Assembly: GCF_006345805.1 (NCBI RefSeq)
Contig: NC_043010.1
Span: 62,310,001 to 62,374,000, forward strand
DNA length: 64,000 nucleotides
DNA from: Octopus sinensis
Lineage: Eukaryota
Reading direction: 5' to 3'
Shown: piece by piece, positions 2,246-60,742 of the stretch
Layout: each line of letters begins with the position of its first letter
How positions within the stretch are numbered: the first letter of the stretch is position 1
Notes under the pieces: generated by a model
The model's input: the letters and a program-made list of their open reading frames with translations, nothing else
What the model was told of the DNA's origin: nothing
The model's database searches: none
Made by a program: the position numbers and the translations under genes

Positions 2246-2749
2246 CCCTTTCGTTACTATATTTATTTTGAGCATCTGATTGTGGCCGTTGCCAGCCTCA
2301 TCTGGCCCCTGTGCTGGTGGTACGTAAAAAGCACCATCTGATCGTGGCCGTTTGCCAGCTTCGTCTGGCACCTGTGCAGGTGGCACATAAAAAGCACCCA
2401 CTACACTCTCGGAGTGGGTGGTGTTAGGAAGGGCATCCAGCTGTAGAAACACAGCCAGATCAGACTGGGTTTGGCGCAGCCTTCTTTGCTTCCCAGACCC
2501 CAGTTGAACCGTCCAACCCATGCCAGCATGGAAAACGGACGTTAAACGATGATGATGATGATGCTCTGTGTTTCTTTCAATTAATTTTAAATATAACAAA
2601 GAATTTAGTAAAATAACTTTGTAATATTTCAGCTAGTGCTAGGAACATAAATTGTGACTAAGGTTTGGTGGAAGATTTAAATTCAAAACTTATGAAAACA
2701 AGACATTTGGACTACAGAGCTGGTTTCAGCCGGGTTGGTAACAAAAGGG
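2246..2749. mobile_element. piggyBac-type MITE interrupted by an RTE 3' end fragment
   Basis: TTAA|CCCTTTCGTTAC at 2242-2257 and GTAACAAAAGGG|TTAA ending 2753. The internal sequence matches the uninterrupted copy at 26854-27073. Confidence 0.8.
2273..2563 (+). mobile_element. RTE-LINE 3'UTR fragment with (GAT)n tail
   Basis: Same sequence as the 3'UTR that follows the RTE ORF end at 37603-38545; two ~60-bp internal repeats; ends GGACGTTAAACGATGATGATG. Confidence 0.75.
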
Positions 2750-3089
2750 TTAAAACACACACACTCACACCTCACACACCTATACACCCTAGCACTTTTC
2801 CAACTCCCTCCTCTAAAATGTGAATAGTTTTTCTGGTTCCTCTGCTGCAAGAATCCTGTGTATAATCCAGTGTAAGAAACCACTTCTGTATTTGATAGCC
2901 ATTTTTGCACTTATATATTAAATATACACATCTTTACATGTATATATATATCTATAGTATTTATTTTTGTTTTCTTTTCACTGTTTCAGAGTGTACTGTG
3001 TGACCTGTTTTGTTGAGAAGACAATCAGTCGGTCCGAGCCACATTCGTTAAGACTCTACTAGTTCTTGTTTCATGCTTTCATTATCATC

Positions 3090-5429
3090 ATGGAGAGGTC
3101 TGCCGGGATTCCAATCTATGGTGAAATGTATGGCATGCCATTCCATCACAGACTTCCCACACCAAGAATGCCAACCCTTAGCGACTTTTCTGGCAAGCAT
3201 TTCGGCCAGGAACATGCTCTTGATACTCAAAGGATGGCTCCGTTAGGGGGCAAACAATTTCCTATTCATAGCTCACAGAGTTCTCACTCACAGCAAAGGA
3301 TGACGCCGATTGCTGAGAAATCCAGCCATCACCATAGCAACAGTTCTGGGAAGCACATTCACCATCGACATAGTTCTTCTCATTCACACAGCTCTCAAAG
3401 AATGTTAGAACCCGGTGAGAAATCTATCCACAATAGCAGCAGTGACTCTGGGAAGCAGTACTCCCATGACACACACAGGATCTCTCATGTGGCTGAGAAG
3501 TCTTCCCATAGCTCCGGCAAGCATATGTCTCATGGAAGTTGTCAGGAGACTCCAAGGATGTCACATGTTCCAGAGAAAAACATTCACAACAGCATCTCCA
3601 GTAAACAGATCTCTTCCCACAGACATAACTTGGAGAAGGAGAGAATAGCCTCACCAGTTGACAAACCAGACAATAACAGCAACAGCGACCTGTCTGGGAG
3701 CCAGTTCTCTCATGAGTCGACTATAGAGAGCCAGAGACTGCCCTATATTGGTCAGACAGTGTTTCCTGGTAACAATATGTACAGCAGCCAGTATTCTCAA
3801 CCATGTTACCTACCAACTACTGACAGAATGCAGTCAAGCTTGGAGGGCGGACAATCATCTAAGGAGAGTTCTTCTCAAAAGAGCTCCACTTCTAGTATTG
3901 ATAAATCATTCCATGGTGATGTGTCTCAAAAACAATATGGCCCGAACAAATTGTCGCCAAGCCAACCCAAACCACAAGTATTGAGGCAGCTCTTCTGCGA
4001 TTACTGTGGCAAGAAGTTTGCTCAGGAATATTTGATGCACATGCACCGAAGGAAACACACAGGAGAGAAACCGTTCCAATGCGATATCTGCAACAAACAG
4101 TTCTCTCGCAAAGATGTTATGAAAAGACATAAGAAAAACCATATGGAGGGTCTTGTCCAATCCCCCAAAGTTCTTGGAAACAGCTACCAAGTTCCTATGC
4201 AAGAGAATTCTCAAATGGCGAAAAAGCAGTTTACACCAGATAAACTATTTCAATGCGATGTATGCATGAAGTATTTCGGTACGAGGAATTATCTTGAAAT
4301 TCATAAGAGGACTCATACTGGGGAGAAACCATTCCAATGTGATTTCTGTATCCAAAAATTTGCTCGAAGAGACACGCTTCAGATCCATCGACGCACCCAT
4401 ACTGGAGAGATGCCATTCCAGTGTGAAGTCTGTCAGGAGAGATTTTCACAGCGAATAAAGCTTCAGATTCATCAGAAAACACACATTTTGAAGAAACGGC
4501 ACCAATGCGAATTTTGTCTGAAGCATTTTGCACAAAGGTATTACCTACAGATCCATCGACGACTGCACACCGGTGAAAAACTGATGCACTGTGACATTTG
4601 TTTGAAGAAGTTCACTCAAAAACATTACTTAATCATTCACCGAAGAACCCACACGGGAGAGAAACCATTCCAGTGTGACTTTTGCATCCAGAAATTTGCT
4701 CGCAAAACGACCCTTCAAATTCACCGGAGGACTCACACGGGGGAAAAACCGTTCCATTGTGAGATTTGTGACAAGAGGTTCGCCCAGAGCGATAAGTTGC
4801 GAGTTCACCGTCGCACTCATGCACCGAAGCGTCAGTATCAATGCGATATTTGCTTAAAGATGTTTGCGCAGAGACATTATCTTCATGTCCATCAGAGGTC
4901 TCACACGGGAGAGAAACCGTTCCAATGTGAAGTTTGTTTTAAACAGTTTGCTCAGAGAAACACATTACAGATACACAAGCGAACCCACACAGGAGAAAAA
5001 CCATTCCAGTGTGACGTCTGCCTCAAGAACTTTGCCCACAAACACTATCTAAGATTACATAAACGGACCCACACTGGGGAAAAGCCATTTCAATGTGACT
5101 TCTGCCTGAAGCAGTTTGCACAGAAAAACTCTTTGAAGATCCATTGTCGAACCCACACTGGTGAGAAACCGTACCAGTGTGAGATATGCTTCAAGTCTTT
5201 TGCTCAAAGACAATACCTGCGATTGCACAAGATTACACACAGCGGAGAGAAAGCCTACCATTGTGATATGTGCCCGAAACAGTTCACACGAGGGGATACC
5301 CTGCAGAGACACAAGAAGACTCACAACGGACCCCAACCGAGCAGTAAACCTCACAAAGTGTCTGTTAATTCCAACAATAAAACAATTGAAGAGTTTCCAC
5401 CAATGAGCACATACCTGTGGCAGCTGTAG
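3090..5429 (+). CDS. C2H2 zinc-finger protein (ZNF-A): 15 fingers (2+13) and a Ser/His-rich N-terminus
   Basis: Uninterrupted ORF (track 3066-5429; first ATG at 3090). 15 C-x2-C-x12-H-x3-H motifs, mostly with TGEKPF linkers. Polypyrimidine acceptor TTTTCACTGTTTCAG ends at 2989. Confidence 0.93.
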   Translation: MERSAGIPIYGEMYGMPFHHRLPTPRMPTLSDFSGKHFGQEHALDTQRMAPLGGKQFPIHSSQSSHSQQRMTPIAEKSSHHHSNSSGKHIHHRHSSSHSHSSQRMLEPGEKSIHNSSSDSGKQYSHDTHRISHVAEKSSHSSGKHMSHGSCQETPRMSHVPEKNIHNSISSKQISSHRHNLEKERIASPVDKPDNNSNSDLSGSQFSHESTIESQRLPYIGQTVFPGNNMYSSQYSQPCYLPTTDRMQSSLEGGQSSKESSSQKSSTSSIDKSFHGDVSQKQYGPNKLSPSQPKPQVLRQLFCDYCGKKFAQEYLMHMHRRKHTGEKPFQCDICNKQFSRKDVMKRHKKNHMEGLVQSPKVLGNSYQVPMQENSQMAKKQFTPDKLFQCDVCMKYFGTRNYLEIHKRTHTGEKPFQCDFCIQKFARRDTLQIHRRTHTGEMPFQCEVCQERFSQRIKLQIHQKTHILKKRHQCEFCLKHFAQRYYLQIHRRLHTGEKLMHCDICLKKFTQKHYLIIHRRTHTGEKPFQCDFCIQKFARKTTLQIHRRTHTGEKPFHCEICDKRFAQSDKLRVHRRTHAPKRQYQCDICLKMFAQRHYLHVHQRSHTGEKPFQCEVCFKQFAQRNTLQIHKRTHTGEKPFQCDVCLKNFAHKHYLRLHKRTHTGEKPFQCDFCLKQFAQKNSLKIHCRTHTGEKPYQCEICFKSFAQRQYLRLHKITHSGEKAYHCDMCPKQFTRGDTLQRHKKTHNGPQPSSKPHKVSVNSNNKTIEEFPPMSTYLWQL

Positions 5430-7649
5430 GCCCACGGATGTCGGCACAGAGCAGGTGACTTATAGAGTATTGAAAGTCTTGTTGCAAAGTAAACGTTGAA
5501 AAACGAATGGATTTTCATGAGCAAATGTCATCAACAACAACATCAACAACAACAGCAAGGGTTGTTACAAGTTGTGAAATGATTTCCTGGCCATTCAGTT
5601 GTAAAAACAGCTGCTGAATGGCTGCTTTCAAATGGCAAATGAGTGAGTTTTATCCAGATTATCAGTCTTGACCAGACTGGAAGAGAATAGTGGGCTTTTT
5701 GTGGTTGGTCAAACACTAACCAACATTGTACACATAAACTGTCCCTTTTTTAATGAGGGATATTGTAATTAGATCTCAATTATATGCAACACATACACAC
5801 CACACACATATATATATATATATACATACATACATACACTGATATATATGTGTGTGTGTGTGTACTCTAATACATGTACACATATTCACATACATTTATA
5901 TATGTACACTAGTATATACACATGAATCTGTAGAGGTATTTCTACCTATGTATATTGCTACACATATACATACATATAGACAAATAGATATACATATGTG
6001 TGTGTATTTATTTATATATATATATATTATATATACACACACATACACACACACAATTTATATGTACAAAGGAACAGTCAATGATTACCATTATTGTGTA
6101 TTAAAAAAAATTCATAACAACACTAACACCTGAGATATCCAAGAAAATCCTGTTTTCCCCACCCCAACTCTTTGTCTCCCCTGTTTCTCCACACTTCTAG
6201 ATATTGTTCCTTTCTCTTCTTCTTCTTCTATGCCCCCCCCCCCCATCACACAACACACATTATAACGATCTACTGAGAAAAGCCACAACTAATTTGCATA
6301 TAATTCGTTATGCCCTCTCCATGCAGCTGCTTGTTTCCTAGACTTGTGGCACAGACCATTGTCCCTTACTGCCATCACAACTGTAGAAAAACGTTGAGTT
6401 TTTGCTGTGTCCATCCCACCCAGCACCCCACATTCTGCTGCTCCCACTGTTAAAAACCCAGTCCTTCTTCCCTGCTACCCCAAACATTTACCTTCTGTAA
6501 TTCCCTCCTTGTTAACAATAGTGACTGTTCCTGAATAATGTTTGATGTGTGTGGCAGTGAGGATGGATGGCCATGGCTACAGCCTCCACCCCCACCTTTC
6601 ATACACCTTCAAAGGAATGCTCTTAAACTGTGACTGCAGTGCAGTCTTCTGGTCTCGTATTGTGGCTCACTGTAGACGTGATGGTCGTGGTTGGAATGAT
6701 TTGATTATAGGGCTACTCAGTTAAGGTCGACCCCCCTGGCTAAACAATAAGAAACGGGTGACCTCTAACTGTGTTCGAGACGTCTGCGAATACTGGCGAC
6801 CATTTTTGGATTGGGACAAATCAGTGCTTCTTTACGGGACAAGTAAGAGTACAGCAACAACAACAACAGGAGCAAGCGGTGCAGCAGCAGTGCACGAAGG
6901 GCAAACTGCTCCCTTATGTGCCACATAGCCCCCAGTGTAATGTGGAATGCTGGAGAGGAAGAGGTCAAGTAAAACAGATCTAGGAGTTCATATATATATA
7001 TAAGTACTTATTGGCTGTCTGTTGGATAAACATAAACACACACACACACACACATTAATACATGCACACACGCATATATATATGTGCATGAAAATAGTAG
7101 CCATGTATACACAGATATGTGTGAATATAGAACATGTAAATAATCAACTGAAAAGCTCCCATATTTGCCTACATTAAAACTGAATTGATACACAATCTCA
7201 TGTATTCACATGTGGACCTATACGTATGCATGTGTATATTTATATATATGTACATACACATATACGTGTGTGTATATACGTATGTATGTACAATGACAAC
7301 TAGCCGTAGCTTCAATCATTAGCCATCATATACACCCTCAACACTCAGTTCATATACACGTGTATATGTGTCTTAACTAAAAAGCATGACATTTAAAGAA
7401 AGCTTGTCAGTTTTTTTTGTTTCTTTTTTGTTTTTGAAGAAAAAAAAAACTCTTATGTATGTATGTTTGTTTCACTTATTGGACACCCACCACCAACCCC
7501 CGTCCCCTAACCCACCCCCGTTGTGCTGTGTGAATTCCTTCTTAAACAAGAAAACAAAAAAAAGCCCCCTAAAACTCTACAAATGCACTGATTTGATAGG
7601 GAGAGGAAGGATAAGGGAGATTTGGCCTTTCGACCCACACCCCTCTTTT

Positions 7650-7673
7650 TATATATATATATACATATATATG

Positions 7674-7717
<44 letters not shown>

Positions 7718-7760
7718 ATATTGGGGTCCATTGTGAGTCTTCTTGTATATATATATATAT

Positions 7761-7796
<36 letters not shown>

Positions 7797-7808
7797 CATA
7801 TATATACA

Positions 7809-7844
<36 letters not shown>

Positions 7845-8035
7845 CATATATATACATATTATATATATATATACATATATATACATATATACATATATAA
7901 TATATATATACATATATACATATATATACATACATATATATATATATATATTATACATATATACATATATATATACATACATATATATATATATACATAT
8001 ATATACATACATATATATATATACATATATGTATG
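7650..8035. repeat. Compound (TA)n/(TACA)n microsatellite
   Basis: Directly visible. Similar tracts lie at about 8490-8700, 21149-21300, 25055-25125 and 31700-31995 and generate the YI/IY-rich spurious ORFs. Confidence 0.95.
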
Positions 8036-8496
8036 TATCCTTTGTTTTTCTTATATTGTTTGTTGTCTTTTGTGAGTGAATTAAGCATCGGCATTTCCTC
8101 TGCAGTTAATCCACAGCTTATGTTCGCCCTTCCGAACCAATCACGGATGTATTTCCCTGGAGGTAACACCTGCCATACAGCCATACACGCATCTTACACC
8201 ATACATACACACACACAAACCTATATACACACACGTGTGTATTATATTTATATATTTGTGTGTGTGTGTGTATGTATATATATATATATATATATGTATA
8301 TGTGTATATATATTATTTGCCTGAGCATTTAATTCCATAGCATTATACAAATTCACATGCATTTATACACACACATATATACATCCCTGGACATGCACAT
8401 ACAATATATTATTGCCTTTGCTTCCCTTTATAAAACAGTACACATTATATACACTCACTCATACATTAACTTGTATGTGAGTATAAATGTATGTAT

Positions 8497-8543
<47 letters not shown>

Positions 8544-8590
8544 TATTATATATATGCATATATATATATATATGCATATATATATATATA

Positions 8591-8624
<34 letters not shown>

Positions 8625-8668
8625 TATATATATATATGCATATATATATATATATATATATATAGATA

Positions 8669-8699
<31 letters not shown>

Positions 8700-10799
8700 G
8701 CAGTCATACTGGCGTCATCATTACCCATATTGACAAAGACATGATATGTGTGTGTGTGTTTGGGTAGGTGCAGCAGTATAGTCTTCAATAAGGTGTAGTG
8801 GTCCTGCTGTTTTTGGTCTTTTACTGCCACTGAACAATGGTTCTAAACCTAGCTGTGCCTTCCTTGTAAAAGAATCTCGACTCTGTTGAAGGAGATATCC
8901 ATGATAAAAACAACTAAACCCCAATTTTGGTAATAATCGTCATAGTTTGTTGTTGATTAGCTCCAGATCATCCCAAATGGAGCAGGCCTTTGACCAAAGC
9001 CATTCCAACCATGCCAATCTCATCGTTTTATATAATATCAAGGACTATATTGCTCTACGTGTCCTTTGTTTGTTTTAAGGTGATAGGGTGTGATTTGAGG
9101 GAAACTCAGCTGCCATTTCCAGCGGATTGAACTACCATGTAGAGCTAGCATGGGGCAGCCTTCTTTTGAGAAGCATGCTGCTCTGCTATTTAAAAAGAAA
9201 TTAGGTAATACAGAAACTGAATATTTAATTTATCCACCCTTATTCTATCCGAGAAGGAGATTGAGAAGGTTGTATCATCTTGTAAATAAGGGTCAGTTTT
9301 ATGAAATTCTGCAAACATTTTTGTGGTTTTTATTTAGTTTAAGAGTGCTGTTGCTTACGGATAAATCCTGGTGCCAAAATGGACTCCATTCACTGCTTCT
9401 TTCCATTGTTATTCTGGCTGTTGGGTAGAATCAGCAGAACATCCATCACACGACTGGCTGTAGTTCTTCTAGCTCTTTACAATCTGAATTGAAGTCCTGC
9501 CAAGGTCAACTTTGCCTGTCATCCTTCTACAGTAAGCAGTCAAGTCCTGGGGTCAGTGTAATAGACTGGTCCCTTTCTCTCTAAAACTGCTGGGGCTTTG
9601 TGCCTAAATTAGAAACAGTTCTTATTGCTCTGTCACCAACTCGCCATTGTTCAGCCATCAACCCTTTATAAAATCTACCCGCCCACCCAAAATACTTTAT
9701 ATTGGCTCCTGGTCAATACTGACCCAGCAGGCATGATCAAAGGTGATCCAGCTGTGACCACTCTTATCTTTTGTCTTTTCTGTCATAGTCTATCTAAGAT
9801 TACAAATAAAGCTGGTTGGATGTGATTCAGAGGAGAATTGACTGCTATTTTCAGTAGATCAAGTGTCCTGTAGTATCTCCTTCGCGTAGAAATCCCTTAA
9901 AACTGAGTGTGAATTGGCTGAGCCTGTGATCTCTGACATTCGTTTTGAGTTGCTGGAACCTATTATCCCAGCTGGGTCGGTCATCTTTAAACCAACTGCA
10001 GTATTTTCCCCAATTTAGTATCACAGCAAGTGAATGAGAATACTACATCTTGCTCTAGAAATTCCTCCATACTTCTTAAAACTCCATGAAGGTGTTAGGG
10101 ACACAAGTTACCCTTGTCCTAATCTCTTCTTGTGATGTCAATGTGTATATTGTTACGGTGTTGGCATGGCCATGCGATAAAGGAATTCACTCCAAAACCA
10201 CATTGGTTGGTAAGTTCTGTGATGGCCTCAGACTATCCAATGGGTTGGGGTGTGAATGGAACTGGTGCTCAGAAACTGATGGCAGCTCATCCTTTGTGTC
10301 CTATCTTTGATGTTTGTACATTGTTTAAAAACAAAGTGACCATTTATACAGAAAAACGATGCAGTTGTTTAAAATCTGCCACAAAAATATGCTCGGTCAT
10401 TGAGCTGTTCGTTGATTGAAGGATATGAAAGAATTAATTATACCTTGCATGGAAGCAGGCAAGGGTTGATGACATCAAATGATGTTGAGTAAACAGACAC
10501 AAATATACAATGGGTTTCATTCAGTTTCCATCCACCAAATCCATTCACAGGCTTTGGTTGACCTGGGGCCATAGTAGAAACCACTTGTCCAAAATGCTAC
10601 ACTGAACATAAACCTGGAACGTGGTTGGGATGTGAACTTCTTAATCTCAGTCCTGTCTGCACCTATCGACACACGGATGTGTATGTTCACACATCCACCC
10701 CACACTCACTGGTTCTATATACTCATGCTGCAGTAATTCACTTTGCTACATTCTGCTAGCACCAACAGTACCTCTTCCATGTCCATAACCCTCTCAAAC

Positions 10800-15093: not shown

Positions 15094-15865
15094 CAAGAAG
15101 ACTGTATATCTGTTGAGATGCTCTGTTTTTCTCTCAATTATTTAAAATATAACAGAGAAATTAGTAAAATAATTTAGTTATCATTAAGCTAGCGATAGGA
15201 CCATTAATTGTGACTAAGGTTTGGTGAAAGATTTTAATGCAAAACTTTTGAACACAAAACATGTACTACAGAACCAGAGCTGGTTTCAGGCAGATTGGTA
15301 TCAAAAGGGTTAACACAAATACGCAAGCACAAACACACAGATATTGTAAACTTAAGGTTACACATTTACAAGATATAATCCAGGCAGTTCTGATACCATC
15401 TTATTATGTCATCATCATCATCACCATTTGATGTCTGTTTTTCCATGCTGGTATGAGCTGCAGGGTTTGACAGGAGCTGGCAAGGCCAGGAGAGCTACAC
15501 TAAGCTCCATTTGTTTTGCTATGGTTTCTGTGGCTGGATGCCCTTCCTAATGCCAACCACTTTACAAAGTGGACTGGCTGCTAGTGTGCATGTGATCATT
15601 TCATGTCCACTTATCCATGTTTGCATGGATCAGACGTAATTCAGTGAAGCGAATTTGCTGCAGCTGGATGCCCATCCTGTCACCAACCCACACCTGTTTC
15701 CAAGCAAGGTAATATTTCTCTGTGGCCAGACATATTTCATGAATGACTGGGAACAAGCAACATCACTCGTATGATGGTGATGTTCATTTATAACTGTCAC
15801 ACAATATCAAGATAAGCATACATACATAAATATATGTATATCTATAGTATAACCTATATCAAGAA

Positions 15866-26656: not shown

Positions 26657-26853
26657 CTAGGTTTCTTTATATGTAGTGGTTAGACTGGTTTGACAGAGAT
26701 GCAAATTTACATGCTTTGCAATAACTGTTGTAGTCAGTGTGTTTGAGCTGAGGGCCATGTGAATGCCCTTAACACAGGCCACACTGGTAGACATATTACA
26801 CAATGGGGGCCGGGTCATTTTTTTTCATGTTCTTCATCTGTCAGATGATTTAA

Positions 26854-27073
26854 CCCTTTTCTTACCATATTCCTGTTGAGATGCTCTGTGTTTCTTTCAA
26901 TTAATTTTAAATATAACAAAGAATTTAATAATATAACTTAGTTATCATTCAGCTAGTGTTAGGAACAGGAATTGTGACGAAGGTTTGATGGAAGATTTTA
27001 ATTCAGAACTTATGAAAACAAGACATTTGTACGCAGAGCCAGAGGCGTTTTCAGCCGGGTTGTAATAAAAGGG
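26854..27073. mobile_element. piggyBac-type MITE, uninterrupted
   Basis: TTAA|CCCTTTTCTTAC...GTAATAAAAGGG|TTAA. Related longer copies with an internal duplicated terminus lie at about 27125-27483 and 58920-59272. Confidence 0.8.
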
Positions 27074-28273
27074 TTAAAACAGATTTTCTACGCTTTAACA
27101 CTTTTGTTAATGTATTTGGATCGCTTGAACCCTTTCATCACCATTGTTTCTGTTGAAATACTCTGCCTTTCTTTGACTTGGTTACAAATATAACAAAATT
27201 TAATGAAATATTTTTGTCATTATGAATCAGATGCTTGGAACATCAGTTAACATGAAATTTTGAATGGAAGGTTTTAGTTTAGATCACTTTAACCCTTTTG
27301 TTACCATATCTTGGTTGAAATACCACTGCCTTTGTTTCAATTAGTTTTGAAAATAAGGAAGAATTTAGTAAAATCCTTGTCGTTTATTAAACTGTTGTTT
27401 GGCGCATAGCATGGAAGTTTAAATCAGAAAGTTTATATCTCAGAACCAGGGGCAGTCTCAGGTAGATGGGCACCAAAGGGGTGAAATCTCAGGTAGGTTG
27501 GTCTCATAGAACTCGGGTGGTCTCAGATGATTTAGTGTCAAAGAGCTAGGGTTATTCTCAAAAGGGCTGAGGTTACAAAAGTAGGGGTGGTCTCAGGTGG
27601 CTTGGTATAATTATTATTCTTTTGCTTTTCTGTATTAAATGGAATAAATATGAAATCAAAACCAATTTTCTTCTTTTTTTTTTCTCCCCCCCAGGTCTTG
27701 GCTGTTGTCGTCATTTGACCCCCAACTTCCATCGAAGCAGAATAATATTGCAGCTGAGTATCTAAACTCATTTGGAACTTTTCAAAGATTTTAAACCCTT
27801 TTTTTAGATGTGTTTTTCTGTGTTTCAAAAATATTGCTGTGCCTCCATATTTATATATATTTAACAAGAAGCTGCCAGACGCACAGACAGACAACCAAAG
27901 TTTCTGAAGACATACATTACTTTTATTGGGATAATTCTCGGATTTTTTATTTTCCTCTCGTGCATGACATTCTGTTGTCCAAATTCCAATATGAACCGAC
28001 AGAAATCTAAGATTCCGCCATTTGTGGTTGTGGGTGGCCTCAGAAATTAATCCGTACAAAAACCTAAAGATGTCCTGTATTGTGTGAAGTGAGGACACAA
28101 ACACAAGAATGATTTCATTTGTGTTGTGTTAAAAGGGAAATCTTGGGACGAAACCCTGACCGAACATTGTTTACCAATGAGAAGATAACAGCAAGTTTGA
28201 ACTTTCTTTTTCTTCTGTTCGTTTTCTATTTTCTCCAAATTTTAGATTTAGAAAGAATTCAGCCAACACCAAA

Positions 28274-29849
28274 ATGTATTCGGTCCAGTCCAATGATAAC
28301 TGCTTTGAGAATTGTGGAGGTGGGGGCCATAATCACTCTCAGTCTTTTTCACCACCGAATGGCCACCACCACCACCATCATCACCACCACCATCACCATC
28401 ACAACAACAACAATGGCTCGTTCATGTTTAAACCGAAAGGTAACGAAGCCCGGGACAAGCCATTCAAATGTGATATCTGTCGTAAAGGTTTCACACTAAA
28501 AGCCTACCTCCAGCGGCACCAGATGGCCCCAGAAGCTGGCAAGCATTTCAATTGTAACTTCTGCAGCAAAGTGTTTCCGCAGCGAGACAGGTTAGAGAAA
28601 CACGAGAGGACCCACACAGGTGAAAAGCCGTTCACCTGTGACATTTGCTCCAAGTCCTTCTCACAGAAGTCTCACCTGAACACACACAAAATGGTTCACC
28701 AGGGAATTAAACCAGCCAACCGTGTGAAACACAAGAACCTCCACAACCATTCTACCAACATGGCAATGATGGTTCCTCGAAAGCAGTTTCATAACCACTC
28801 CCACAATCATGGTCACACCCATAGTCACAACCACAGTCATAATCATGGCCACACCCACTCTCACAACCACGGCCACGCCCACAACCACGCCCATAACCAT
28901 GGCCACACCCACAATCACAACCACAGTCACGGCCATTTTCACGGAAGCAATGTGTCGTTCCAGAACAGCGGACACTTTAACTCCAAAGCATTCCCGATTA
29001 ACAGAGGAAATGAAGCTCGAGATAAGCCCTTTAAATGTGATGTATGTCGCAAGGGTTTTACTTTGAAGGCCTACCTACTCAGGCACCAACTTGCCCCTGA
29101 AACTGGCAAACACTTCCCTTGTCCGTTTTGCAGCAAAGTCTTCCCACAGAGGGACCGTCTTGAGAACCACCAAAGAACCCACACCGGGGAGAAACCGTTC
29201 ACGTGTAACCTTTGTGGGAAAAGTTTTGCGCAAAAATCCCACCTGAATACCCACAAGCACACACACAGTGGCGAGAAGCCACACCAGTGTCCCATTTGCA
29301 ATAAGTCTTTTGCCCAGAAGGACCATTTAAACAAGCACAGACGGACTCACACTGGCGAGAAACCTTTCCAGTGTACGATTTGTCTGAAAACCTTCTCCCA
29401 GAAGACCCACCTGAAGCAGCACAGTCGCATTCACGTCGGGGAAGAATTCTCTCAGTCCATGGGCCATAACCATCATCATCATCATGTCCATAATCATAGT
29501 CAGCACCAAAACCATCACACCAACAGCAGCCCTTCGGACACTCAAATGACCGCTGATGGCCATGGAAGCAAGCAGCAAACGCCAGCCCTGGTGTCCAGTG
29601 GTGGTGGTGCTGGTGGTACTACGACCCACCACCAGATGGCAGCCAGCTCTAGTTCAGCATCGACCTCATCTGGGACAGCATCAACCCATCATACATCGTC
29701 AATGAGGAAACAGCAGCCACAGCACTCGGCTACGTCACCGTCTCCCACTGTCGTTACCCCGGGGACCCTAGCTTCCAATTCTTGCTCTCATCAGATGACG
29801 CAGTCTTCATCATCGCAGCATGCAGCTCCACCACCGCCACCTCCAAGGA

Positions 29850-29882
<33 letters not shown>

Positions 29883-30325
29883 CTCCACCACCACCACCAC
29901 AGCAACAGCAGCAGCAACAACAACAACAACAGGCTCAGCATCACCATCATCATCAACAGCAGTCCACGCCATCGTCTTCCCCATCTTCATCGTGTCAAAT
30001 GATGTCACAACATCAAGCAGGACTCCGCAAATCGTCATCGTCGTCGTCATCAATGTCCCCCGCAGCCTGTTCTCACCAGATGATGTCCCAACATGCTTCC
30101 ATTCGGCAGCAACCAGCCACCGTAGCGTCAGCATCAATGAACTCCACATCTCCCCATCAACTTCCACAGAGACCTGACAACAACTACTGGAAGCGCAGCT
30201 TCCCCGTTACCACAGCATGGAATTCTGGTTGGTCCAACCAACCGGCTACCACGACATACGGCGTCGGACAAAGAAAGTGCGAGAGCCAAGAGGCTGTCCG
30301 CTACATCCAGACTCTTTTACAATAA
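28274..30325 (+). CDS. C2H2 zinc-finger protein (ZNF-B): 8 fingers (2 lacking the last His), His-rich and Gln/Ser-rich regions
   Basis: 683-aa ORF; six canonical fingers plus two C-x2-C-x12-H fingers; acceptor AGs end at 28245 and 28251, just upstream of the ATG. Confidence 0.92.
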
Positions 30326-31741
30326 CTTTTCTGACAATACTTGTGGAGAAACAAGTCGGAAAAGACAAGCATGAGAATTCTGTTTGTAGACCCTTTTTTG
30401 AAACGGTCTACGATCCCATCATTTGATTTAATCTTTCTTTCAAACTCCAGAGGGAAAAAAATCTTGTCAAGTCTACGACGAAGCGATTCCCTTGATGCGT
30501 CTCCAGTCCAGGGTGCAATGAGTATTTTTCTAAAAAACTGTTATTACATCATTTTCTTATCAGTCTGCGTTAGTCCACTTCCTTCTTTATAGAAAGCTGT
30601 GGTAGTTTGTCCTACAATCAGTGTGGGAAATTAGGACATGATGAGTCGGTGGGAAACCACCTGTGAAACTCCTAGCATCACACACACACATACACAAACA
30701 AACACACACACACACACAAAGTGAAGAAAATTGAGATGTTTAAATGATAGCAAGGTTGTAGCTGGGAACCTCACAAGAATCTCTTCTCCTCCAGGCTACA
30801 TTCTTTATTATTAAATCTGCTCACATCACATCCTATAGAAAGATGTCTGCAGTGAGTAATTTTATTGTCAAGTAGAAACCCGACCCCTTTATCTGTCATA
30901 CTTATTCCTTAGTAAACCCTTGTAGAGTCTCCATTATAAATATATTTAAACAAAAGACATCTTTTTCTTTTCTCTTTTTGCAACCATGTTTTCTATTTCA
31001 ATGGGGTGTTTATAATTTGTCCTTTTCTATATAGAGCAGCTGGCTGTCCTTTTCATTTTAAGGGTCTTTTCACTTTAGCCCCTTTTTTACAATTAGTTTT
31101 TTTTTTTTATTTCTTTCAAAAGGCCACAAAACAGAGCTTTGATTTCATAACATGTCAATCAACGTTGGGCTGGCCCTTTTCAACCCAAGACGCTCAAAGC
31201 TGGTTACTTTGTTTTTAAATCAGTGTTATGAGGGCTGTCCTAATTAGCCAGCCATCTACTTACTTAGATAAGCCCCGATTTAATTAACATCAGTGATTTT
31301 ATTCATCGTTTTTCAATGATGATTGTCCAGAACAGTTACATCAGATTCTTATATTGCTATTTTAAAAACTGTTTTCATACAATAGTGTGGGTTGACTGGG
31401 TCTGCAAACATTGACATTATATTGGTGCTGACACTAATTTTACTACTGAATTTGTTCTCTTCTCTCTCTCTCCTAACATCAGACCCCACTCGACCATGAA
31501 GCTGGAGTATGGCAGCATAGTTAGAGGGGACGGTGAAGAAAAGGACTTGTCTCACAGACAGAGTCTGTCGATTGTGTTCTGTGGCAAGATCTAAGCCTCT
31601 CCGTTGCTATGACCCTCCCTGGTAGACTTGGAGTATTATCGAATTGTTCAACCTATACTTCACGCACACAGACAGACAGACACACACTCACACACACATA
31701 CATACATGCATATATACATACATACATATATACACACATAC

Positions 31742-31804
<63 letters not shown>

Positions 31805-31835
31805 TACACATATATATACATACATATATACATAC

Positions 31836-31882
<47 letters not shown>

Positions 31883-31885
31883 TAC

Positions 31886-31931
<46 letters not shown>

Positions 31932-33609
31932 GCACACACATTTATATATATATGTATGCATGTATATATATATATATATATAAATATATATATAAAACTT
32001 TACTTTTCCTAGTGGGAGTGCCTGTTGTCCACACAACATGCCCACCCCCACAGCAATCCCTGTATATACAGCCACTCCCATAACACTCCCCCCACACAGA
32101 CACCTGTGTGTTCTCATGATTTACATTACCAAGATTTTTCATTTTCTGTTTGTTTTTAAAATCTCTATAAACGAACGATATATATATATATATATATGTG
32201 TGTATGTGTGTGTGTATATACACACATAAAGCTATGTACACCATGTGTTGTATAAACTTCTGACTACAATCAATATTAATACTACTACGACTGCTACTAC
32301 TACTACTATTACTACTACTATTTCATTATATCCAGTGAATTCTAGATTTTTTTTTTTGCCCCTCTTTGTCTAGCCCCCGATGTCATTACTTCAAACCGAA
32401 CCACTGTTATGATACCATCACAGTAAGGGCCTATTTCTGGCCCCTTTCATTTCATATGGGGTTACCATCAAAGATGGCGCCAAAACGGATCTTACTAGGG
32501 AGTATGTTGCCCAACTAAATTGCGTGTACATAGAACTATTATACATCCTTGTGTGTGTGTGTATGTATGTGTGTCTGTGTATGTGTGTGTATATATGCGC
32601 CTACATAAATATATACATACATGTGTATGTGTATATGTATATATATGCAGGTGTGTGTGTGTGCACAATCAACATTGCTGAGTTTGTATAAATATGCTTA
32701 ATCCTGTTTGTGTGTTTCTTCTGTCCGTACGTCTCCAGTTCACACCACACTGCATACCCCCCTCTTTCTGCTCCCCACCCCATCCCCAAACAACCCCCCC
32801 CCACAGCCCCCACCCCCTTCTCACTGATCATGACAATTCATATCATGCTGCTGTTTGCTATTTGCTGCCCCCCCCCCGTTGCCCCTATATGCAGCATATT
32901 GCAACGGCATCCTGTAGCATCAATCAGCCTAAACATGCCACGAATCTTCATCAGTCTCCATCAATCACCATCACTCGACCTATTGGCTTTTTAACGTTTT
33001 GACTTATTTTTTGGCTGCAAAATATTTCTTCCTTTCTCTGGTTTCATTTATTTGTTGTTAGTTTATTATTTCAGCTTTGCCTGATGAAACAAAATACCAG
33101 TTACGTACTGGGGGGGTCAGTGTAACTTACTTTTTTCCGGCCCCTAAATTTCAGGTCTTGTGCCCTTATATGGTAGAAATTACTAGAGTTAGGGCAATGG
33201 GTGGTAGAAACTGGAGAGGTCACAGAACAATACCTGGTGGTGTTTAGTTACATCCCTTCAGCTTCTGGGTTTAAATCCCTCATGACATTGTCTGTGTTTT
33301 TTTATAAGCATCTGTGAAGTAGGGGTGGGATTTGTACCAGTCATGAATTGGGGTTTGATGTAACTTATTGACCTCTCACCTTGGCAATTCCTTGTGTTTG
33401 GGTCTGTTTTAGAAGGAATTCTGGTGCTGTTCTCTACTTAGACTGGTTTCAAGCAGTGAAATGTGGCCATGCTGGGGCATCACTCGAGGTTCTGGTTGAT
33501 AAATGACTAACATTATGGGGATTTACCTGATATACCATGAGTCCAACAAACAGTGTCTTCGAGTCCTGCAAGAGATGCCTTCGACGTATCACTCCCCCCC
33601 CCCTGGGCC

Positions 33610-37602: not shown

Positions 37603-38545
37603 ATGGGTACAGACTGTGTGACACATGTGTGCAAACAACCATGCTACATGGCAGTGAAACCTGGTCCGTGACTGCTGAGGACATGCGTAATCTTGCGAGT
37701 AATGAAGCCAGTATGCTCTGCTGGGTGTGTAATGTCAGTGTGCATACATGAGAGAGTGTAAGCGCCCTGAGAGAAAGGTTGGACTTAAGAAGCATCAGAT
37801 GTGGTGTGCAAGAGAGACAACTGTGCTGGTATGGTCATGTGTTGCATATGGATGAGGACAGCTGTGTGAAAAAGTGTCACACCCAAGGAATTGAGGGAAC
37901 CTGTGGAAGAGGTAGACCCAGGAAGTTCTGGAATGAGGTGTTGAAACATGATCTTAGAACATTGGGCCTCACTGAGGCAATGACAAAGACCTTTGGAGAT
38001 ATGCTGTGCATGAGAATACCCAACAAGCCAAGTGAGATAATAACCGTGGCCTATGCCAATGCAGCATAACCATCACATGTAATAGTGTCCTTCAATCATT
38101 GGGCAATAAACTGCGCTTGCGAAGACCTGTTGAGGCAAGTGAAATCATTGTCATGGCCGATAACAATACTGCCCAATTAGCACCTGTGCCAGTGGCACAT
38201 TAAAAGCACCATTCAAGCGTGATCGTTTCCAGGGCCGCCTGATTGGCACCCATGCTGGTGGCACATAAAAAGCACCATTTGAACATGATCGTTGCCAGCA
38301 TCGCCTGCTGGTGGAAAGTGAAAAGCACCATTCAAGCGTGGTCCATGCCAGTACCACCTGACTGGCTCCTGCGCTGGTGGCATGTAAAAGCATCCACTAC
38401 ACTCTCAGAGTGGTTGGCATCCAACTGTAGAAACACTGCCAGATCAGATTGGAGCCTGTTTCAGGCTTCTGGCTTGCCAGCCCTCAGTCAAACCATCCAA
38501 CCTATGCCAGCATAGAAAACGGATGTTAAACGACAATGATAATAA
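37603..38545 (+). mobile_element. 5'-truncated RTE LINE: ORF2 C-terminus, 3'UTR with ~60-bp tandem repeats, (GAT)n-like tail
   Basis: MLHGSETW-like codons near 37640; ORF RQLCWYGHVLHMDEDSCVKK...GRGRPRKFW, a typical RTE end; then 4-5 AAAAGCACC-containing repeats and the tail shared with many short copies. Confidence 0.85.
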
Positions 38546-38899
38546 TATTTGTGTCTGTGTTTGCCCACCCCAATATTGCTTGAAAACCAATGTTGATGTG
38601 TTTATATCCCTGTAACTTAGTGGTTCAGCAAAAAAGACTGATAGAATAAGTACTATGCTTATAAAGAATACGTCCTGGAGGCAATTTTGTTTGACTAAAG
38701 GTGGTGCTCCAGCATGGCCGCAGTCAAATGACTGAAACGAGTAAAAGAATAAAAGAATATATGTATGTATACACACATATATGTATGTGTGTATACATAT
38801 ATATATATATATATATATACAGTGTGATTAGAGTTGTTTTGTGTGCTGCTTCTGTTGAAGTTGGGTGGAGAGACTCCTTTGTGCCTCCTGTCATGATGT

Positions 38900-39825
38900 A
38901 GGTTCATCTGGTATCACAAATAAAAATTTTTCCAGATACTCATTGAAGATCTCCGCATTTACACATCACAAATTCTTGAGGCTGTTTGGCAGAATGTCGA
39001 ACAGTTGGGGACCCTTGTAACCTAAGCTGTTACAATACTGGCTCCATATTCTAGATGGAGAAGTCGGGATCTTTGGTTCTATGCAGTACCATTCAGTCTG
39101 ATGATTGGAATAGCTTTAAATTCCAAAGTTGGGAGCCAGATCTTCCAGGGTCTTCCATACCACTGCATATCTTCCACACCTTCTCCTTGGAAGTAGAGCA
39201 TCAATTCCTTTAGCCTGTCCGAGAAGCTCATATGTTTCTCTGAATCAGTCTTTGTGTAGTGGTTGCTTCAAGTTCCGCCGACATGAGTGGGGAGACATAA
39301 ATCAGACAACTGAGAATGAAAGTTCTCCCTAAGGGTAGTGTAGTACCTTTTTTTCTGATTCTGAATGATCTCGGAATCCATCCAGCTCTTCACCTGTACA
39401 ATACTGCCATCTCAATAATGTGCTCATGGAATGTTGCATGCTTTCTCATGTGGATTCTCTGGTCACACCACCTCTGACTCAGTGAATGCTCTACCCTCTA
39501 GCCCTCTGTATTCTGATTCTAGTCTGTTTGTGAGCCAACAGTGGAGGGCTTGAACATTCTCAGCATTCAACTGCATGTTATTTTTCATCAGCCCTTTTGC
39601 AGGGTGTTTGGCAGTGTCAGTCATCAGGGTCAATAATAATTTTGTGTCATCAATATGGCTGGTGAGAGTGGCTGAGGGAACCACCACAAACAGTAGGGGT
39701 CCCAATACAGTTCCTTGAGGGATTCCACTGAGAATTGATCTTCCCAAAGAGAACAACATCGGCTGCAATTGTCTGACTCTTGCCTTATAGGAAGTCGTAC
39801 CACCACTTCCCTGACTGGCTTCCAT
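38900..39825 (-). pseudogene. CR1-like LINE RT remnant
   Basis: SGIPQGTVLGPLLFVV and IDDTKL (degenerate YADD) in the minus ORF at 39463-39825; several frameshifts. Confidence 0.75.
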
Positions 39826-41786: not shown

Positions 41787-42115
41787 ATCATCATCATCAT
41801 CATCATTTAACATCCGCTTTCCATGCTGGCATGGGTTGGACAGTTTGACTGAAGGCTGGCGAACCAGATGGCTGCACTAGGCTCCAGTCTGATATGGTAA
41901 TGTTTCTACAGCTGGATGCCCTTCCTAATGCCAACCACTCTGAGAGTTTAGCAGATGCTTTTTACATGCCACCAGCATGGGAGCCAGTCAGGCTGCACTG
42001 GCAATGATCACGTTTGATTGGTGCTTTTTACATGCCACTCGCATGGGTGCCAATCAGTGGGTACTGTCATTGGCCACAACAATGACTTCACTTGCCTCGA
42101 CAGGTCTTCGCAGAT
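41787..42115 (-). mobile_element. RTE-LINE 3'UTR fragment
   Basis: (CAT)n followed by the reverse complement of the RTE tail and internal repeats. Other copies at about 15412-15590, 16670-16880, 39830-40075, 41270-41435 and 54475-54650. Confidence 0.75.
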
Positions 42116-47400: not shown

Positions 47401-48676
47401 CTCTCTCTCCATCTCACCACCTCCAATCATCATTTCATTAAAAATCCACCAACAGGCAGCCATATTTTACCACTGATATAGCAATATTTTTTTGCTATTT
47501 TTTTAGTCAATGTAACATCTTTTTCTTCTGATTTTGTGTTCAAATTGTTTTAAAAAAAACACAAAGAAAAAAAAACCCCAAACAATAAATCTGAGTGACA
47601 AATTATGGTGTATTTACATATGTTTATGTTTGTAGTAATAATATATATGATTGTGTCTGCCAAAGATTTATATATTATATATGTGTGTGTGTGCTTGTGA
47701 TACATATATATATATATACATATGTATATATGGTTGTGTGTGAGTGTCTAACAAGGCATGAAACCCTACCTAATGTTCCGTGCAAGCCAACCTTGTATAG
47801 AGATATTTGGTGTGCATAAATATATATATATATATTTGTATATATATATTATATATGTGTGCACACACTCACCACACACAAACTGTAGGTAGTTACTGAA
47901 AAAGTTCTTTTTTCTTTATCTTCTTCCCTTTTGATCATCTCCAAAAGAAATAAGACGAGATTCCTCTCTTTGCTATAGCATCAGAATACTGTATATTATT
48001 ATTATTATTATTATTTTCCTTGATATTGTCCTTGTAATAGTAGTAGCAGCAGCAGCAGTTTCTATACACACACGCACGCGTGTACATTGTGCTGTGTGTA
48101 TACACTGGTATTGTATGCTTGTTTTTATGATATTTCTTGGGATTCAGCCACCTTTTTCACTACAATCAATATGTGCCTTTTCTATTGATGTCCCTTCCAC
48201 TCAACACTCATAGGACGCAGCACATATATGAGCCCTTTTACATACAAAATGTTTCAGGTTCAAATCTGACTCCTGACATCTCCACTGGCATTTAAAACAA
48301 AAAAAAACCTTTTTTTTAAATTCTTTTCCTGCAGAAAGTTTTAAAGATTGAAAAAAGGAAGAAAAACGACCCATATTTTCTCAAAAGATATCTCCAACAT
48401 TGGTCTGCAGTTTTTGTTGTTTTTTTTCCTGGTTCAGAATATACTGGAAGAAACATGACACTTTTTCCGTTCAATGTTTCATTTTCCGTTCTTCTGGTTT
48501 TCCTTCCTTTCTTTCCTTTTCGTTTTTTCCAGCAAATGGAAACAATAACGTGGATATGTGTGCGCGTATGCATCTGCGTGTATACATAAAGCCACACACA
48601 TACATACACAGACATATATACACATACATATACACACACACTGCAGGTAATGTGTGTGTATACATACCAACGTGTA

Positions 48677-48709
<33 letters not shown>

Positions 48710-51143: not shown

Positions 51144-51196
<53 letters not shown>

Positions 51197-60450: not shown

Positions 60451-60485
<35 letters not shown>

Positions 60486-60695: not shown

Positions 60696-60742
<47 letters not shown>

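What the first reader, a model, noticed from the sequence alone, without database searches (positions are those of the whole stretch)
3160..3745. Fossil zinc fingers: the ZNF-A N-terminal low-complexity region is built from Cys-to-Ser fingers
Seen: SDFSGKHFGQEHALDTQRM (from 3180) and SDLSGSQFSHESTIESQRL (from 3684) keep exact C-x2-C-x3-F-x5-L-x2-H spacing. Both Cys positions are Ser codons one base from Cys (AGC, TCT), and the first His position is Gln (CAA, CAG). Between them lie 4-5 more decayed units with EK linkers and SGK[HQ] (GEKSIHNSSSDSGKQYSH, AEKSSHSSGKHMSH, PEKNIHNSISSKQISSH). The first relic aligns with the gene's own finger 1 (CDYCGKKFAQEY). Inference: an old finger array lost its zinc ligands but stayed in frame as a Ser/His-rich disordered domain, possibly a new effector or phosphorylation region.
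Basis: partly seen in the sequence, partly recalled or inferred. Interest (0 to 1): 0.7.

Follow-up and report, generated by a model that had tools for sequence, protein, structure and literature searches.

The report
Ligand-less zinc-finger relics, re-amplified as repeats
The serine/histidine-rich front end of this octopus zinc-finger gene is a tandem repeat that still has the layout of C2H2 zinc fingers but none of their zinc-binding residues; one already "dead" unit was probably copied about seven times and the region is still kept by selection, which makes it an extreme case of the known degenerate zinc finger.

Summary
The window is Octopus sinensis. ZNF-A (3090..5429, +) is one ORF of 779 aa with 15 canonical C2H2 fingers.

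The N-terminal 295 aa resolve into about 10 units of 22-34 aa, with the layout [xEK]..S..SGK[HQ][FYIM]SH..QR[MIL]. With the four ligand columns masked, a cyclic finger profile aligns through the whole region. It scores 36.6 bits, against 12.1±2.2 for column permutations that keep the repeat structure (0/1000). hhalign gives P=1.7e-4. With ligand columns included there is no significant signal, and Pfam finds nothing.

Sister paralogues carry clearer relic arrays, and some of their units still hold Cys.

Units u1-u7 are each other's closest relatives and share the DNA core TCY-GGN-AAR-CAN. This points to one ligand-less unit being amplified, not to an old array decaying finger by finger. The codon argument carries no information: 39 of 45 Ser codons are one step from Cys.

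The region is constrained (0 nonsynonymous, 4 synonymous differences against O. vulgaris) and AlphaFold2 predicts it disordered. Its function is inferred, not shown.

Verdict: observation confirmed, interpretation partly supported, a new variant of a known kind.

The parts
3090..5429 (+). ZNF-A coding sequence, a single ORF of 779 aa plus stop. The start Met opens the motif MER..IPIYGEMYG, which is conserved in relatives.
   Evidence: The exact protein is encoded in O. sinensis CM016872.1 and O. vulgaris OX597827.1. The start and the C-terminal YLWQL tail are shared with P0006, P0016 and P0025 (P0045 keeps YMWSL).
3090..3170 (+). Unit u0 (aa 1-27). This is the conserved family N-terminal unit, IYG[DE]MYG[KM].F. 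It is a relic with Gly at the first Cys position and Tyr at the second.
   Evidence: Its best matches are the first units of P0025, P0016 and P0006 (scores 60-76). In P0006 the unit reads DMYSKQFAQR..QRISH, and the family-finger HMM scores that whole N-terminus above all 500 shuffles (full-sequence 5.8 bits against a shuffle maximum of 5.5).
3171..3740 (+). Units u1-u7 (aa 28-217): 3171-3236, 3237-3302, 3303-3404, 3405-3482, 3483-3560, 3561-3647 and 3648-3740. These are seven tandem copies, 22-34 aa each, of a ligand-less finger-derived unit.
   Evidence: MAFFT unit alignment. DNA repeat families D1-D3. Each unit's best partner is another unit of the same gene. Cyclic finger-profile alignment. 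hhalign P=1.7e-4.
3741..3830 (+). Unit u8 (aa 218-247), IGQTVFPGNNMYSSQYSQPCYL..DRM. This is a conserved family unit, a relic with Tyr at the second Cys position.
   Evidence: Its best matches are the third units of P0006, P0025 and P0016 (scores 60-63). It aligns in phase with the finger profile.
3894..3974 (+). Unit u9 (aa 269-295), SIDKSFHGDVSQKQYGPNKLSPSQPKP. This relic lies directly in phase with finger 1. It has G and S at the Cys positions.
   Evidence: 12.1 bits with ligands masked, and the alignment runs straight into finger 1. The HMM built from the gene's own fingers also picks up DKSFHGDVSQKQ weakly.
3975..4142 (+). Canonical C2H2 fingers 1-2 with their linker (aa 296-351).
   Evidence: Regex and Pfam. 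AlphaFold2 folds finger 2 as beta-beta-alpha with block-mean pLDDT 81-87.
4233..5324 (+). Canonical C2H2 fingers 3-15 (aa 382-745), contiguous 28-aa units.
   Evidence: TRF finds an 84-nt period at 4902-5182.

Best explanation
The N-terminal 295 residues of ZNF-A consist of about ten units that descend from C2H2 finger-plus-linker modules and have lost all zinc ligands. The loss is old. Relatives in O. bimaculoides and in the cuttlefish Acanthosepion already lack Cys in the matching units. The product is a Ser/His-rich, intrinsically disordered N-terminal region that cannot form beta-beta-alpha zinc fingers. It is nevertheless maintained by purifying selection. It most likely acts as a non-DNA-binding effector or regulatory tail of a DNA-binding protein (protein-protein contacts, phosphorylation, possibly loose metal binding by His clusters).

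Shown here: the repeat anatomy, the finger-like layout, the absence of ligands, the selective constraint and the predicted disorder. Inferred: descent from fingers, the order of events, and the function.
For: Finger-like layout:
- A cyclic profile built from 97 family fingers, with ligand columns masked, aligns aa 20-282 in continuous phase. It scores 41.3 bits against 13.4±2.6 for shuffles (0/300).
- Under a null that permutes alignment columns and so keeps the repeat structure, the score is 36.6 against 12.1±2.2 (0/1000).
- The result holds for other gap costs (z 8.5). It also holds for an independent profile of 234 vertebrate and insect fingers (50.6 against 14.1±3.3, 0/400).
- His-rich tracts of the other two ZNF genes in the window score like shuffles (z 0.3-0.5).
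- hhalign of the unit profile against the finger profile gives P=1.7e-4, with EK on GEK, S..S on C..C and GKQ on xKxF.

Paralogues:
- P0027, P0035 and P0037 have relic arrays with z 17-18 masked and 7-11 unmasked.
- Their units read PFPSDIYSKEFLQRHS, HRINSHLSDK and QRMTPSLEK. Cys survives at the second Cys position in 3 of 9 P0027 units. At one first-Cys position Argonauta (P0037) has Cys where O. vulgaris (P0035) has Ser.

Amplification:
- Each of u1-u7 has another ZNF-A unit as its best match, while u0 and u8 match the orthologous units of relatives.
- The units share the core TCY GGN AAR CAN.
- Relatives carry a single copy of the unit.

Constraint: O. sinensis and O. vulgaris differ at 0 nonsynonymous and 4 synonymous sites in codons 1-300, while the flanks differ at 3.1%. 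P(0 nonsynonymous) is about 1e-7.

Disorder: AlphaFold2 gives pLDDT 38-49 and no secondary structure for aa 1-290, while finger 2 in the same model folds.
Against: - With ligand columns included the signal is weak or absent: p about 0.02 by shuffling, 0.06-0.07 by column permutation, and z 0.2 with the external profile.
- Pfam reports no zf-C2H2 match at E<=10 in this N-terminus or in those of the paralogues.
- hmmsearch with the family finger HMM is not significant for ZNF-A (158 of 500 shuffles score as high). A cruder profile-profile test gave only p=0.03-0.07.
- Most of the masked score comes from three units: u1 25 bits, u6 17 bits and u9 12 bits. Units u2-u5 and u7 score about 0 or below.
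- No homologue has Cys in the unit that matches u1-u7. In relatives that unit (SGGKQLSMGHHTL..QR) is less finger-like than u1.
- The xEK 'linkers' of u3-u6 are absent from that single-copy unit. They are present in the P0027 clade, so some units could be ancestral and not new copies.
- The direct link between the ZNF-A and P0027 N-termini is only BLASTP E=0.034.
- The AlphaFold2 run used a single sequence.
- Function was not tested.
Confidence: 0.55

Rival explanations
1. An ancestral array of working fingers sat N-terminal to the present array. Each finger lost its Cys and His ligands independently in place (Cys to Ser, His to Gln) and the units decayed into a low-complexity region.
For: The finger-like layout and phase are the same as for the best explanation. 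The P0027/P0035/P0037 clade shows multi-unit relic arrays with xEK linkers and occasional surviving Cys. Such an array could be ancestral to the whole family. QRMTPIAEK in ZNF-A resembles QRMTPSLEK in P0027.
Against: Five units carry the same TCY Ser codon followed by GGN AAR CAN at the second Cys position. Independent loss would require the same substitution five times. u1-u7 are more similar to each other than to any paralogue unit. P0006, P0016, P0025, P0045 and P0062 have only one copy between the conserved u0 and u8 units.
Confidence: 0.15
2. Chance resemblance. The region is an ordinary Ser/His-rich tandem repeat with no finger ancestry. Its period of about 27 aa and its GK.F and EK motifs mimic a finger by accident.
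For: None of the 10 units has the full ligand set. Pfam is silent. The unmasked tests are not significant. Half the units contribute nothing to the masked score. The homologous single-copy unit in relatives is not picked up by the finger HMM.
Against: The masked score beats every one of 1000 repeat-preserving permutations, and does so with an external profile as well. hhalign gives P=1.7e-4. The relic phase continues without a break into real finger 1. Related proteins show unmistakable relics such as LKEFAQRSSLH and PFPSDIYSKEFLQRHS. Control His-rich tracts from neighbouring ZNF genes show no signal.
Confidence: 0.2
3. The units still bind metal. His clusters (13% His, with HHH, HxH and HRISH motifs) would coordinate Zn or Ni in a non-canonical way, so the region would be a metal-dependent module and not a plain disordered tail.
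For: There are 25 His in 196 residues. HRISHVAEK keeps H-x3-H followed by a linker. All three ZNF genes of the window carry His-rich tracts.
Against: There is only one Cys in the repeat region (a second lies in u8). AlphaFold2 predicts no fold. At the aligned ligand columns His occurs only three times (one at a Cys column, two at the second-His column), no more than the 13% His content would give.
Confidence: 0.1

Closest known systems
Degenerate (non-canonical) C2H2 fingers inside or beside tandem arrays, as described for mammalian KRAB-ZNF genes (Lorenz et al. 2010, PMC2865497)
   Same: These are finger-derived modules in frame with a working array that have lost zinc ligands and presumably zinc binding. 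[quoted passage not shown]
   Different: [quoted passage not shown] Here none of the ~10 consecutive units keeps the ligand set. Pfam cannot see them, the region is a large part of the protein, and one ligand-less unit has itself been amplified into a new tandem repeat under purifying selection.
ZNF750 'degenerate' finger (PMC10465944)
   Same: It is a finger classed as degenerate from its sequence.
   Different: According to that paper's highlights, ZNF750's domain still ligates zinc (CCHC, pM Kd) and folds. The ZNF-A units have no Cys pair and are predicted disordered.
Lineage-specific N-terminal domains of expanded ZNF families (KRAB; FiNZ in cyprinid fish, Wells et al. 2023, PMC10547256)
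   Same: A non-finger N-terminal region sits on a poly-finger protein in a lineage with a large ZNF expansion. FiNZ is itself a short 28-aa N-terminal sequence.
   Different: ZNF-A has no sequence similarity to KRAB or FiNZ, and Pfam finds nothing. Here the N-terminus appears to be recycled finger units. No repressor function has been shown.
Relic arrays in the sister clade, 'zinc finger protein 45-like' of O. vulgaris, O. sinensis, O. bimaculoides and Argonauta hians (P0035, P0121, P0122, P0037) and P0027
   Same: They share the C-terminal tail with ZNF-A, and both N-termini are relic arrays. They lie on the same chromosome, 1.2 Mb away in O. sinensis. Their N-termini are built of finger relics with xEK linkers.
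   Different: Their relic units keep Tyr, or occasionally Cys, at the second Cys position and keep the FAQR signature. They are not Ser/His-rich and show no recent amplification of one unit.

Membership tests
C2H2 zinc finger domain (Pfam PF00096 zf-C2H2) | Four zinc ligands with the spacing C-x2-4-C-x12-H-x3-5-H | tested here: not met
   The pattern C..C.{12}H.{3,4}H occurs 15 times, all at aa 303-745 and none before. At the profile-aligned ligand columns the N-terminal units have S/I/G/N at the first Cys, S/H/Y at the second Cys, T/A/S/I/K at the first His and P/A/S/L/H/Y/Q at the second His.
C2H2 zinc finger domain (Pfam PF00096 zf-C2H2) | Match to the curated profile at or above the gathering score | tested here: not met
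   hmmscan of aa 1-300 against Pfam-A found 0 families at E<=10. The full protein scores 163 bits with 15 stretches, all in the C-terminal part.
C2H2 zinc finger domain (Pfam PF00096 zf-C2H2) | Beta-beta-alpha fold | tested here: inconclusive
   AlphaFold2 (single sequence) gives no secondary structure and pLDDT 38-49 for aa 1-290. Finger 2 in the same model folds as E-E-H with block-mean pLDDT 81-87. No deep alignment was available.
C2H2 zinc finger domain (Pfam PF00096 zf-C2H2) | Non-ligand scaffold: a TGEKP-like linker, aromatic residue at the F position, aliphatic residue at the L position, basic residues after the first His | tested here: met
   The ligand-masked cyclic profile scores 36.6-41.3 bits against nulls of 12-13±2.5, with 0/1000 and 0/300 reaching it. 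An external profile gives 50.6 against 14.1±3.3. hhalign gives P=1.7e-4. The strength is uneven across units.
Degenerate C2H2 finger as usually annotated (at least 2 of 4 ligands kept; criterion of PMC2865497) | [quoted passage not shown] | tested here: not met
   No unit has any Cys at a ligand column. In the automatic alignment His falls on the second-His column in two units, and read by eye only HRISH keeps both His. That is no more than the 13% His composition would give.
Homology (common descent) with C2H2 finger units | Homologues or paralogues that retain Cys/His at the corresponding positions | tested here: inconclusive
   Met in the sister clade. P0027 units read C,Y,Y,Y,Y,C,C,Y,Y at the second Cys column, and Argonauta has AQCDTYPKDY where O. 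vulgaris has PQSDAYPKDY. Not met for the unit orthologous to u1-u7 in P0006, P0016, P0025 and P0045, which have N/S/H and G there. True orthologues of ZNF-A outside O. sinensis and O. vulgaris could not be retrieved.
Intragenic tandem repeat (amplification of one unit) | Copies more similar to each other than to homologous units elsewhere, with shared DNA-level motifs | tested here: met
   For each of u1-u7 the best-scoring partner is another ZNF-A unit (scores 45-56, against at most 43 for paralogue units). DNA families D1 (5 copies), D2 (4 copies) and D3 (3 copies) are 64-83% identical. TRF does not call the array because the copies are too diverged.

The most novel reading that the evidence does not exclude
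A whole clade of cephalopod poly-ZNF genes (ZNF-A, the 'ZNF431'-like group and the 'ZNF45-like' group, linked on one chromosome) has turned a decayed finger array into its conserved N-terminal non-DNA-binding domain. Ligand-less finger units then behave as a new repeat family that can re-amplify, as seen here with seven copies. This would be a concrete route by which disordered effector regions of transcription factors are born from their own DNA-binding repeats.
Probability: 0.4. Interest if true: 0.55.

Novelty: new variant of a known kind. Interest (0 to 1): 0.4.

Why it matters
Degenerate fingers are usually treated as debris at the edges of ZNF arrays. Here about 40% of a protein appears to be made of fully ligand-less finger relics. 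The region is kept in frame, is under clear purifying selection between two octopus species, and has been expanded by copying a dead unit. If that holds, it gives a traceable example of a disordered, probably regulatory domain arising from DNA-binding repeats. It would also give a handle on what the N-termini of the hugely expanded cephalopod C2H2 family do; a recent survey of that family (PMC12513265) contains no occurrence of the terms degenerate, N-terminal, low complexity or disordered. On the practical side, ligand-masked cyclic profiles detect such relics where Pfam sees nothing.

Tried and rejected
1. Homology searches with the N-terminus all returned nothing. These were phmmer against 5.8 billion proteins, phmmer against 1.8 billion representatives, and a profile of the family N-termini. 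The last search failed to recover even its own member proteins, so these negatives are uninformative, probably because of compositional filtering.

2. Pfam at E<=10 found no finger in the ZNF-A or paralogue N-termini.

3. hmmsearch --max gave inconsistent results. With an HMM of the gene's own 15 fingers the N-terminus scored 7.0 bits, above all 1000 shuffles. With an HMM of 97 family fingers it scored -1.0 bits, not significant. I therefore did not rely on this test.

4. An averaged-BLOSUM profile-profile Smith-Waterman test gave only p=0.07, or 0.03 with ligand columns masked. I replaced it with the cyclic log-odds test.

5. The codon-proximity argument was rejected as uninformative.

6. A specific origin of relic 1 from finger 1 was rejected, because four other fingers match it equally well.

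7. ZNF-A is not the positional orthologue of O. bimaculoides P0006. blastn of the window against 22 kb around P0006 found only the finger region (72% identity) and dispersed repeats, with no collinear flanks.

8. I considered whether A-to-I RNA editing could restore ligands. Tyr (UAY) to Cys (UGY) is possible in principle for the Tyr-type relics of the paralogues. The TCY Ser codons of u1-u7 cannot be edited to Cys, and Gln or Pro cannot become His. This rests on the genetic code only and I did not pursue it.

9. TRF did not detect the array at the DNA level.
Full report
**What and where.** The window is identical to Octopus sinensis chromosome CM016872.1 at 62.31 Mb. The same 779-aa protein is encoded in O. 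vulgaris. The finding lies in the first third of a single ORF, 3090..5429 on the plus strand. An in-frame TAG sits at 3060, and the conserved start reads MER..IPIYGEMYG. Residues 303-745 hold 15 canonical C2H2 fingers, and Pfam sees 15 stretches. The window holds two further poly-ZNF ORFs.

**The observation.** The strict pattern S..S...F.....[LI]..Q occurs twice. In 20,000 shuffles of the same composition P(>=1) is 0.0012, and no shuffle had two. That test is post hoc, and the two hits are copies of one repeat.

First, 39 of the 45 Ser codons in the region are one step from Cys, and every Gln codon is one step from His. Second, relic 1 matches finger 1 at 6/17 positions, the same as fingers 6, 7, 10 and 13.

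**Anatomy.** Cutting the N-terminus at the recurring [QHPE]R[MIL] landmark gives ten units:

| Unit | Residues |
|---|---|
| u0 | 1-27 |
| u1 | 28-49 |
| u2 | 50-71 |
| u3 | 72-105 |
| u4 | 106-131 |
| u5 | 132-157 |
| u6 | 158-186 |
| u7 | 187-217 |
| u8 | 218-247 |
| u9 | 248-295 in the MAFFT cut; the relic core is 269-295 |

MAFFT aligns these units with no reference to fingers. The consensus is xxxxEK....S..SGKQ.SH.....TQRM. At the DNA level there are matching repeat families. TCTGGGAAGCAG... occurs five times and AAGGATG..GAGAAA four times, at 64-83% identity. The copies are too diverged for TRF to call.

**Is it finger-like beyond chance?** Standard tools say no. Pfam finds nothing at E<=10. 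An HMM of 97 family fingers is not significant on this N-terminus. An HMM of the gene's own fingers gave 7.0 bits, above all 1000 shuffles, but that result did not hold up with the family HMM. These tests are dominated by the missing Cys and His, so I asked the narrower question of whether the non-ligand scaffold is there.

I built a log-odds profile of the 28-aa finger-plus-linker unit and aligned it cyclically (wrap-around dynamic programming) to the N-terminus.

- With the four ligand columns set to zero, the alignment runs in continuous phase from aa 20 to 282 and then straight into finger 1.
- The score is 41.3 bits, against 13.4±2.6 for shuffles (0/300).
- Repeats could inflate this, so I also permuted the columns of the unit alignment, which keeps the repeat structure and composition. 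The score is then 36.6 against 12.1±2.2, with a maximum of 24.9 in 1000 permutations.
- The result holds at other gap costs. It also holds with a profile of 234 vertebrate and insect fingers (50.6 against 14.1±3.3, 0/400).
- His-rich tracts of the two neighbouring ZNF genes behave like shuffles (z 0.3-0.5).
- hhalign of the unit profile against the finger profile gives P=1.7e-4 in the same register. EK falls on GEK, S..S on C..C, and GKQ. on .K.F.

There are caveats. With the ligand columns included, significance drops to p about 0.02-0.07, or vanishes. Most of the masked score comes from u1 (25 bits), u6 (17 bits) and u9 (12 bits), while real fingers score 37-49 bits on the same scale.

**Relatives.** A full-length search was swamped by generic ZNFs, but it returned a cephalopod family that shares the C-terminal YLWQL-type tail.

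*Clade 1.* This holds P0006 (O. bimaculoides 'ZNF431'), P0016, P0025 and P0045 (Acanthosepion pharaonis). It shares the MER..IYGDMYGKQF start (truncated in P0045), fingers 1-2 and the u8 unit with ZNF-A. It has only one copy of the SGGKQLSMGHHTL..QR unit between u0 and u8. The exact finger spacing of u1 and u7 is not ancestral.

*Clade 2.* This holds P0035, P0121 and P0122 ('ZNF45-like' of O. vulgaris, O. sinensis and O. bimaculoides), P0037 (Argonauta) and P0027. It has long N-terminal arrays of unmistakable relics. Examples are LCTEICGKDCPQRHSIQMQKFPHLLEK, PFPSDIYSKEFLQRHS, AAFSDRCQKEYAHR and HRINSHLSDK. These score z 17-18 masked and 7-11 unmasked. The second Cys position is Tyr in most units but still Cys in 3 of 9 P0027 units. 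At one first-Cys position Argonauta has Cys where O. vulgaris has Ser.

ZNF-A's HRISHVAEK and QRMTPIAEK mirror P0027's HRINSHLSDK and QRMTPSLEK, and the finger's HRRTHTGEK. The direct BLASTP link is only E=0.034.

The family is physically linked. The O. sinensis ZNF45-like gene lies 1.2 Mb from ZNF-A, and in O. bimaculoides P0122 and P0006 lie 0.5 Mb apart. ZNF-A is a paralogue of P0006, not its positional orthologue.

**Order of events.** u0 and u8 have their best matches in the corresponding units of clade 1 (scores 60-76). Each of u1-u7 has another ZNF-A unit as its best match (45-56, against at most 43 for any paralogue unit). At the second Cys position, u1 and u3-u7 all carry a TCY Ser codon. 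In u1, u3, u4 and u5 it is followed by GGN AAR CAN; u6 has AGT and u7 AGC in place of one of these codons. u2 has GGG at the Cys position, and u8 has TAC like the paralogues.

The simplest reading is that one ligand-less unit was amplified, or homogenised, about seven-fold in the ZNF-A lineage. Independent Cys-to-Ser loss in seven old fingers is a less economical account. The xEK linkers of u3-u6 are absent from the clade-1 unit but present in clade 2. This leaves room for some units being ancestral, so I rate this step as likely and not as shown.

**Is it functional?** Between O. sinensis and O. vulgaris the CDS differs at five sites, all synonymous. The flanks differ at 3.1% plus many indels. 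With 719 nonsynonymous sites in codons 1-300, zero changes has a probability of about 1e-7 at the region's own dS, and about 2e-10 at the flank rate. In clade 2 the relic region is 69% identical between O. vulgaris and Argonauta, against 92% for the fingers. So it evolves faster than the fingers but is still conserved.

AlphaFold2, run on a single sequence, predicts no secondary structure and pLDDT 38-49 for aa 1-290. Finger 2 folds as beta-beta-alpha in the same model.

My best mechanistic reading is a disordered Ser/His-rich tail attached to a 15-finger DNA-binding array. It would act through protein contacts, phosphorylation or loose metal binding. This is inference, and no experiment or annotation bears on it.

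**Comparison with what is known.** Degenerate fingers within and beside arrays are well described in mammalian KRAB-ZNF genes. [quoted passage not shown] ZNF750's 'degenerate' finger turned out to bind zinc (PMC10465944). Lineage-specific N-terminal domains such as FiNZ mark other expanded ZNF families (PMC10547256). A 2025 survey of cephalopod C2H2 expansions contains no occurrence of the terms degenerate, N-terminal, low complexity or disordered (PMC12513265).

ZNF-A's N-terminus fails every membership criterion for a C2H2 domain, and also fails the usual 'degenerate finger' criterion. It keeps the scaffold, though, and so it qualifies as finger-derived. It is an extreme, re-amplified and selectively maintained variant of a known phenomenon.

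**Verdict.** The 'fossil finger' idea is supported for the scaffold and for the family as a whole. The specific story of an old array losing Cys to Ser finger by finger, with codons as evidence, is not supported. Interest is moderate.

Noticed in passing
window 28274-30325 (+): A second poly-ZNF ORF of 683 aa with an internal duplication of a block of about 110 aa (GNEARDKPFKCD[IV]CRKGFTLKAYL..GKHF.C.FCSKVFPQRDRLE.H.RTHTGEKPFTC). Each copy is preceded by a His-rich tract, H13 or (HNHS/HGHT)n. The C-terminus is long and rich in S, Q and P. Its low-complexity tracts show no finger-like signal.
   Followed up: partly
window 49904-51871 (-): A third poly-ZNF ORF of 655 aa with (HAHS)n and H10 tracts and a polyQ run of more than 50 residues, followed by 11 near-identical fingers of the type FSHQTNLK.H. 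It opens its array with the same unusual finger pair as the 28274 gene (KCDVCRK.FT....L..HQ.A..GKHF.C.FC), which suggests the two are paralogues.
   Followed up: no
window 3060-3090 and about 2975-2991: An out-of-frame ATG at 3073 lies 17 nt upstream of the ZNF-A start codon. A polypyrimidine tract followed by CAG near 2991 looks like the 3' splice site of the coding exon.
   Followed up: no
window 2282-2753, 15101-15313, 26850-27077, 38260-38807, 39810-40134, 41785-42077, 60228-62307: Dispersed repeats of 200-450 nt, 75-91% identical to copies near unrelated ZNF genes in O. sinensis and O. bimaculoides (L005, L006, L007). They are probably SINE-like or other transposable elements.
   Followed up: no
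window 5760-6130, 7386-8830, 31628-32117, 48316-49016: Long (TA)n, (CA)n and (TATACA)n microsatellite tracts produce spurious 'YIYIYI' ORFs of 90-180 aa on both strands.
   Followed up: no
L003 (P0027, run ERR3431203) aa 6-250; P0035/P0037 aa 5-170: The sister clade has much clearer relic finger arrays with Tyr at the second Cys position and occasional surviving Cys. Tyr codons (UAY) are one A-to-G change from Cys, which is of possible interest given cephalopod A-to-I editing. This was not examined.
   Followed up: partly
Sequence searches with these compositionally biased N-termini returned nothing. A profile search did not even recover the proteins it was built from. Database negatives for such regions should not be read as absence of homologues.
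   Followed up: partly
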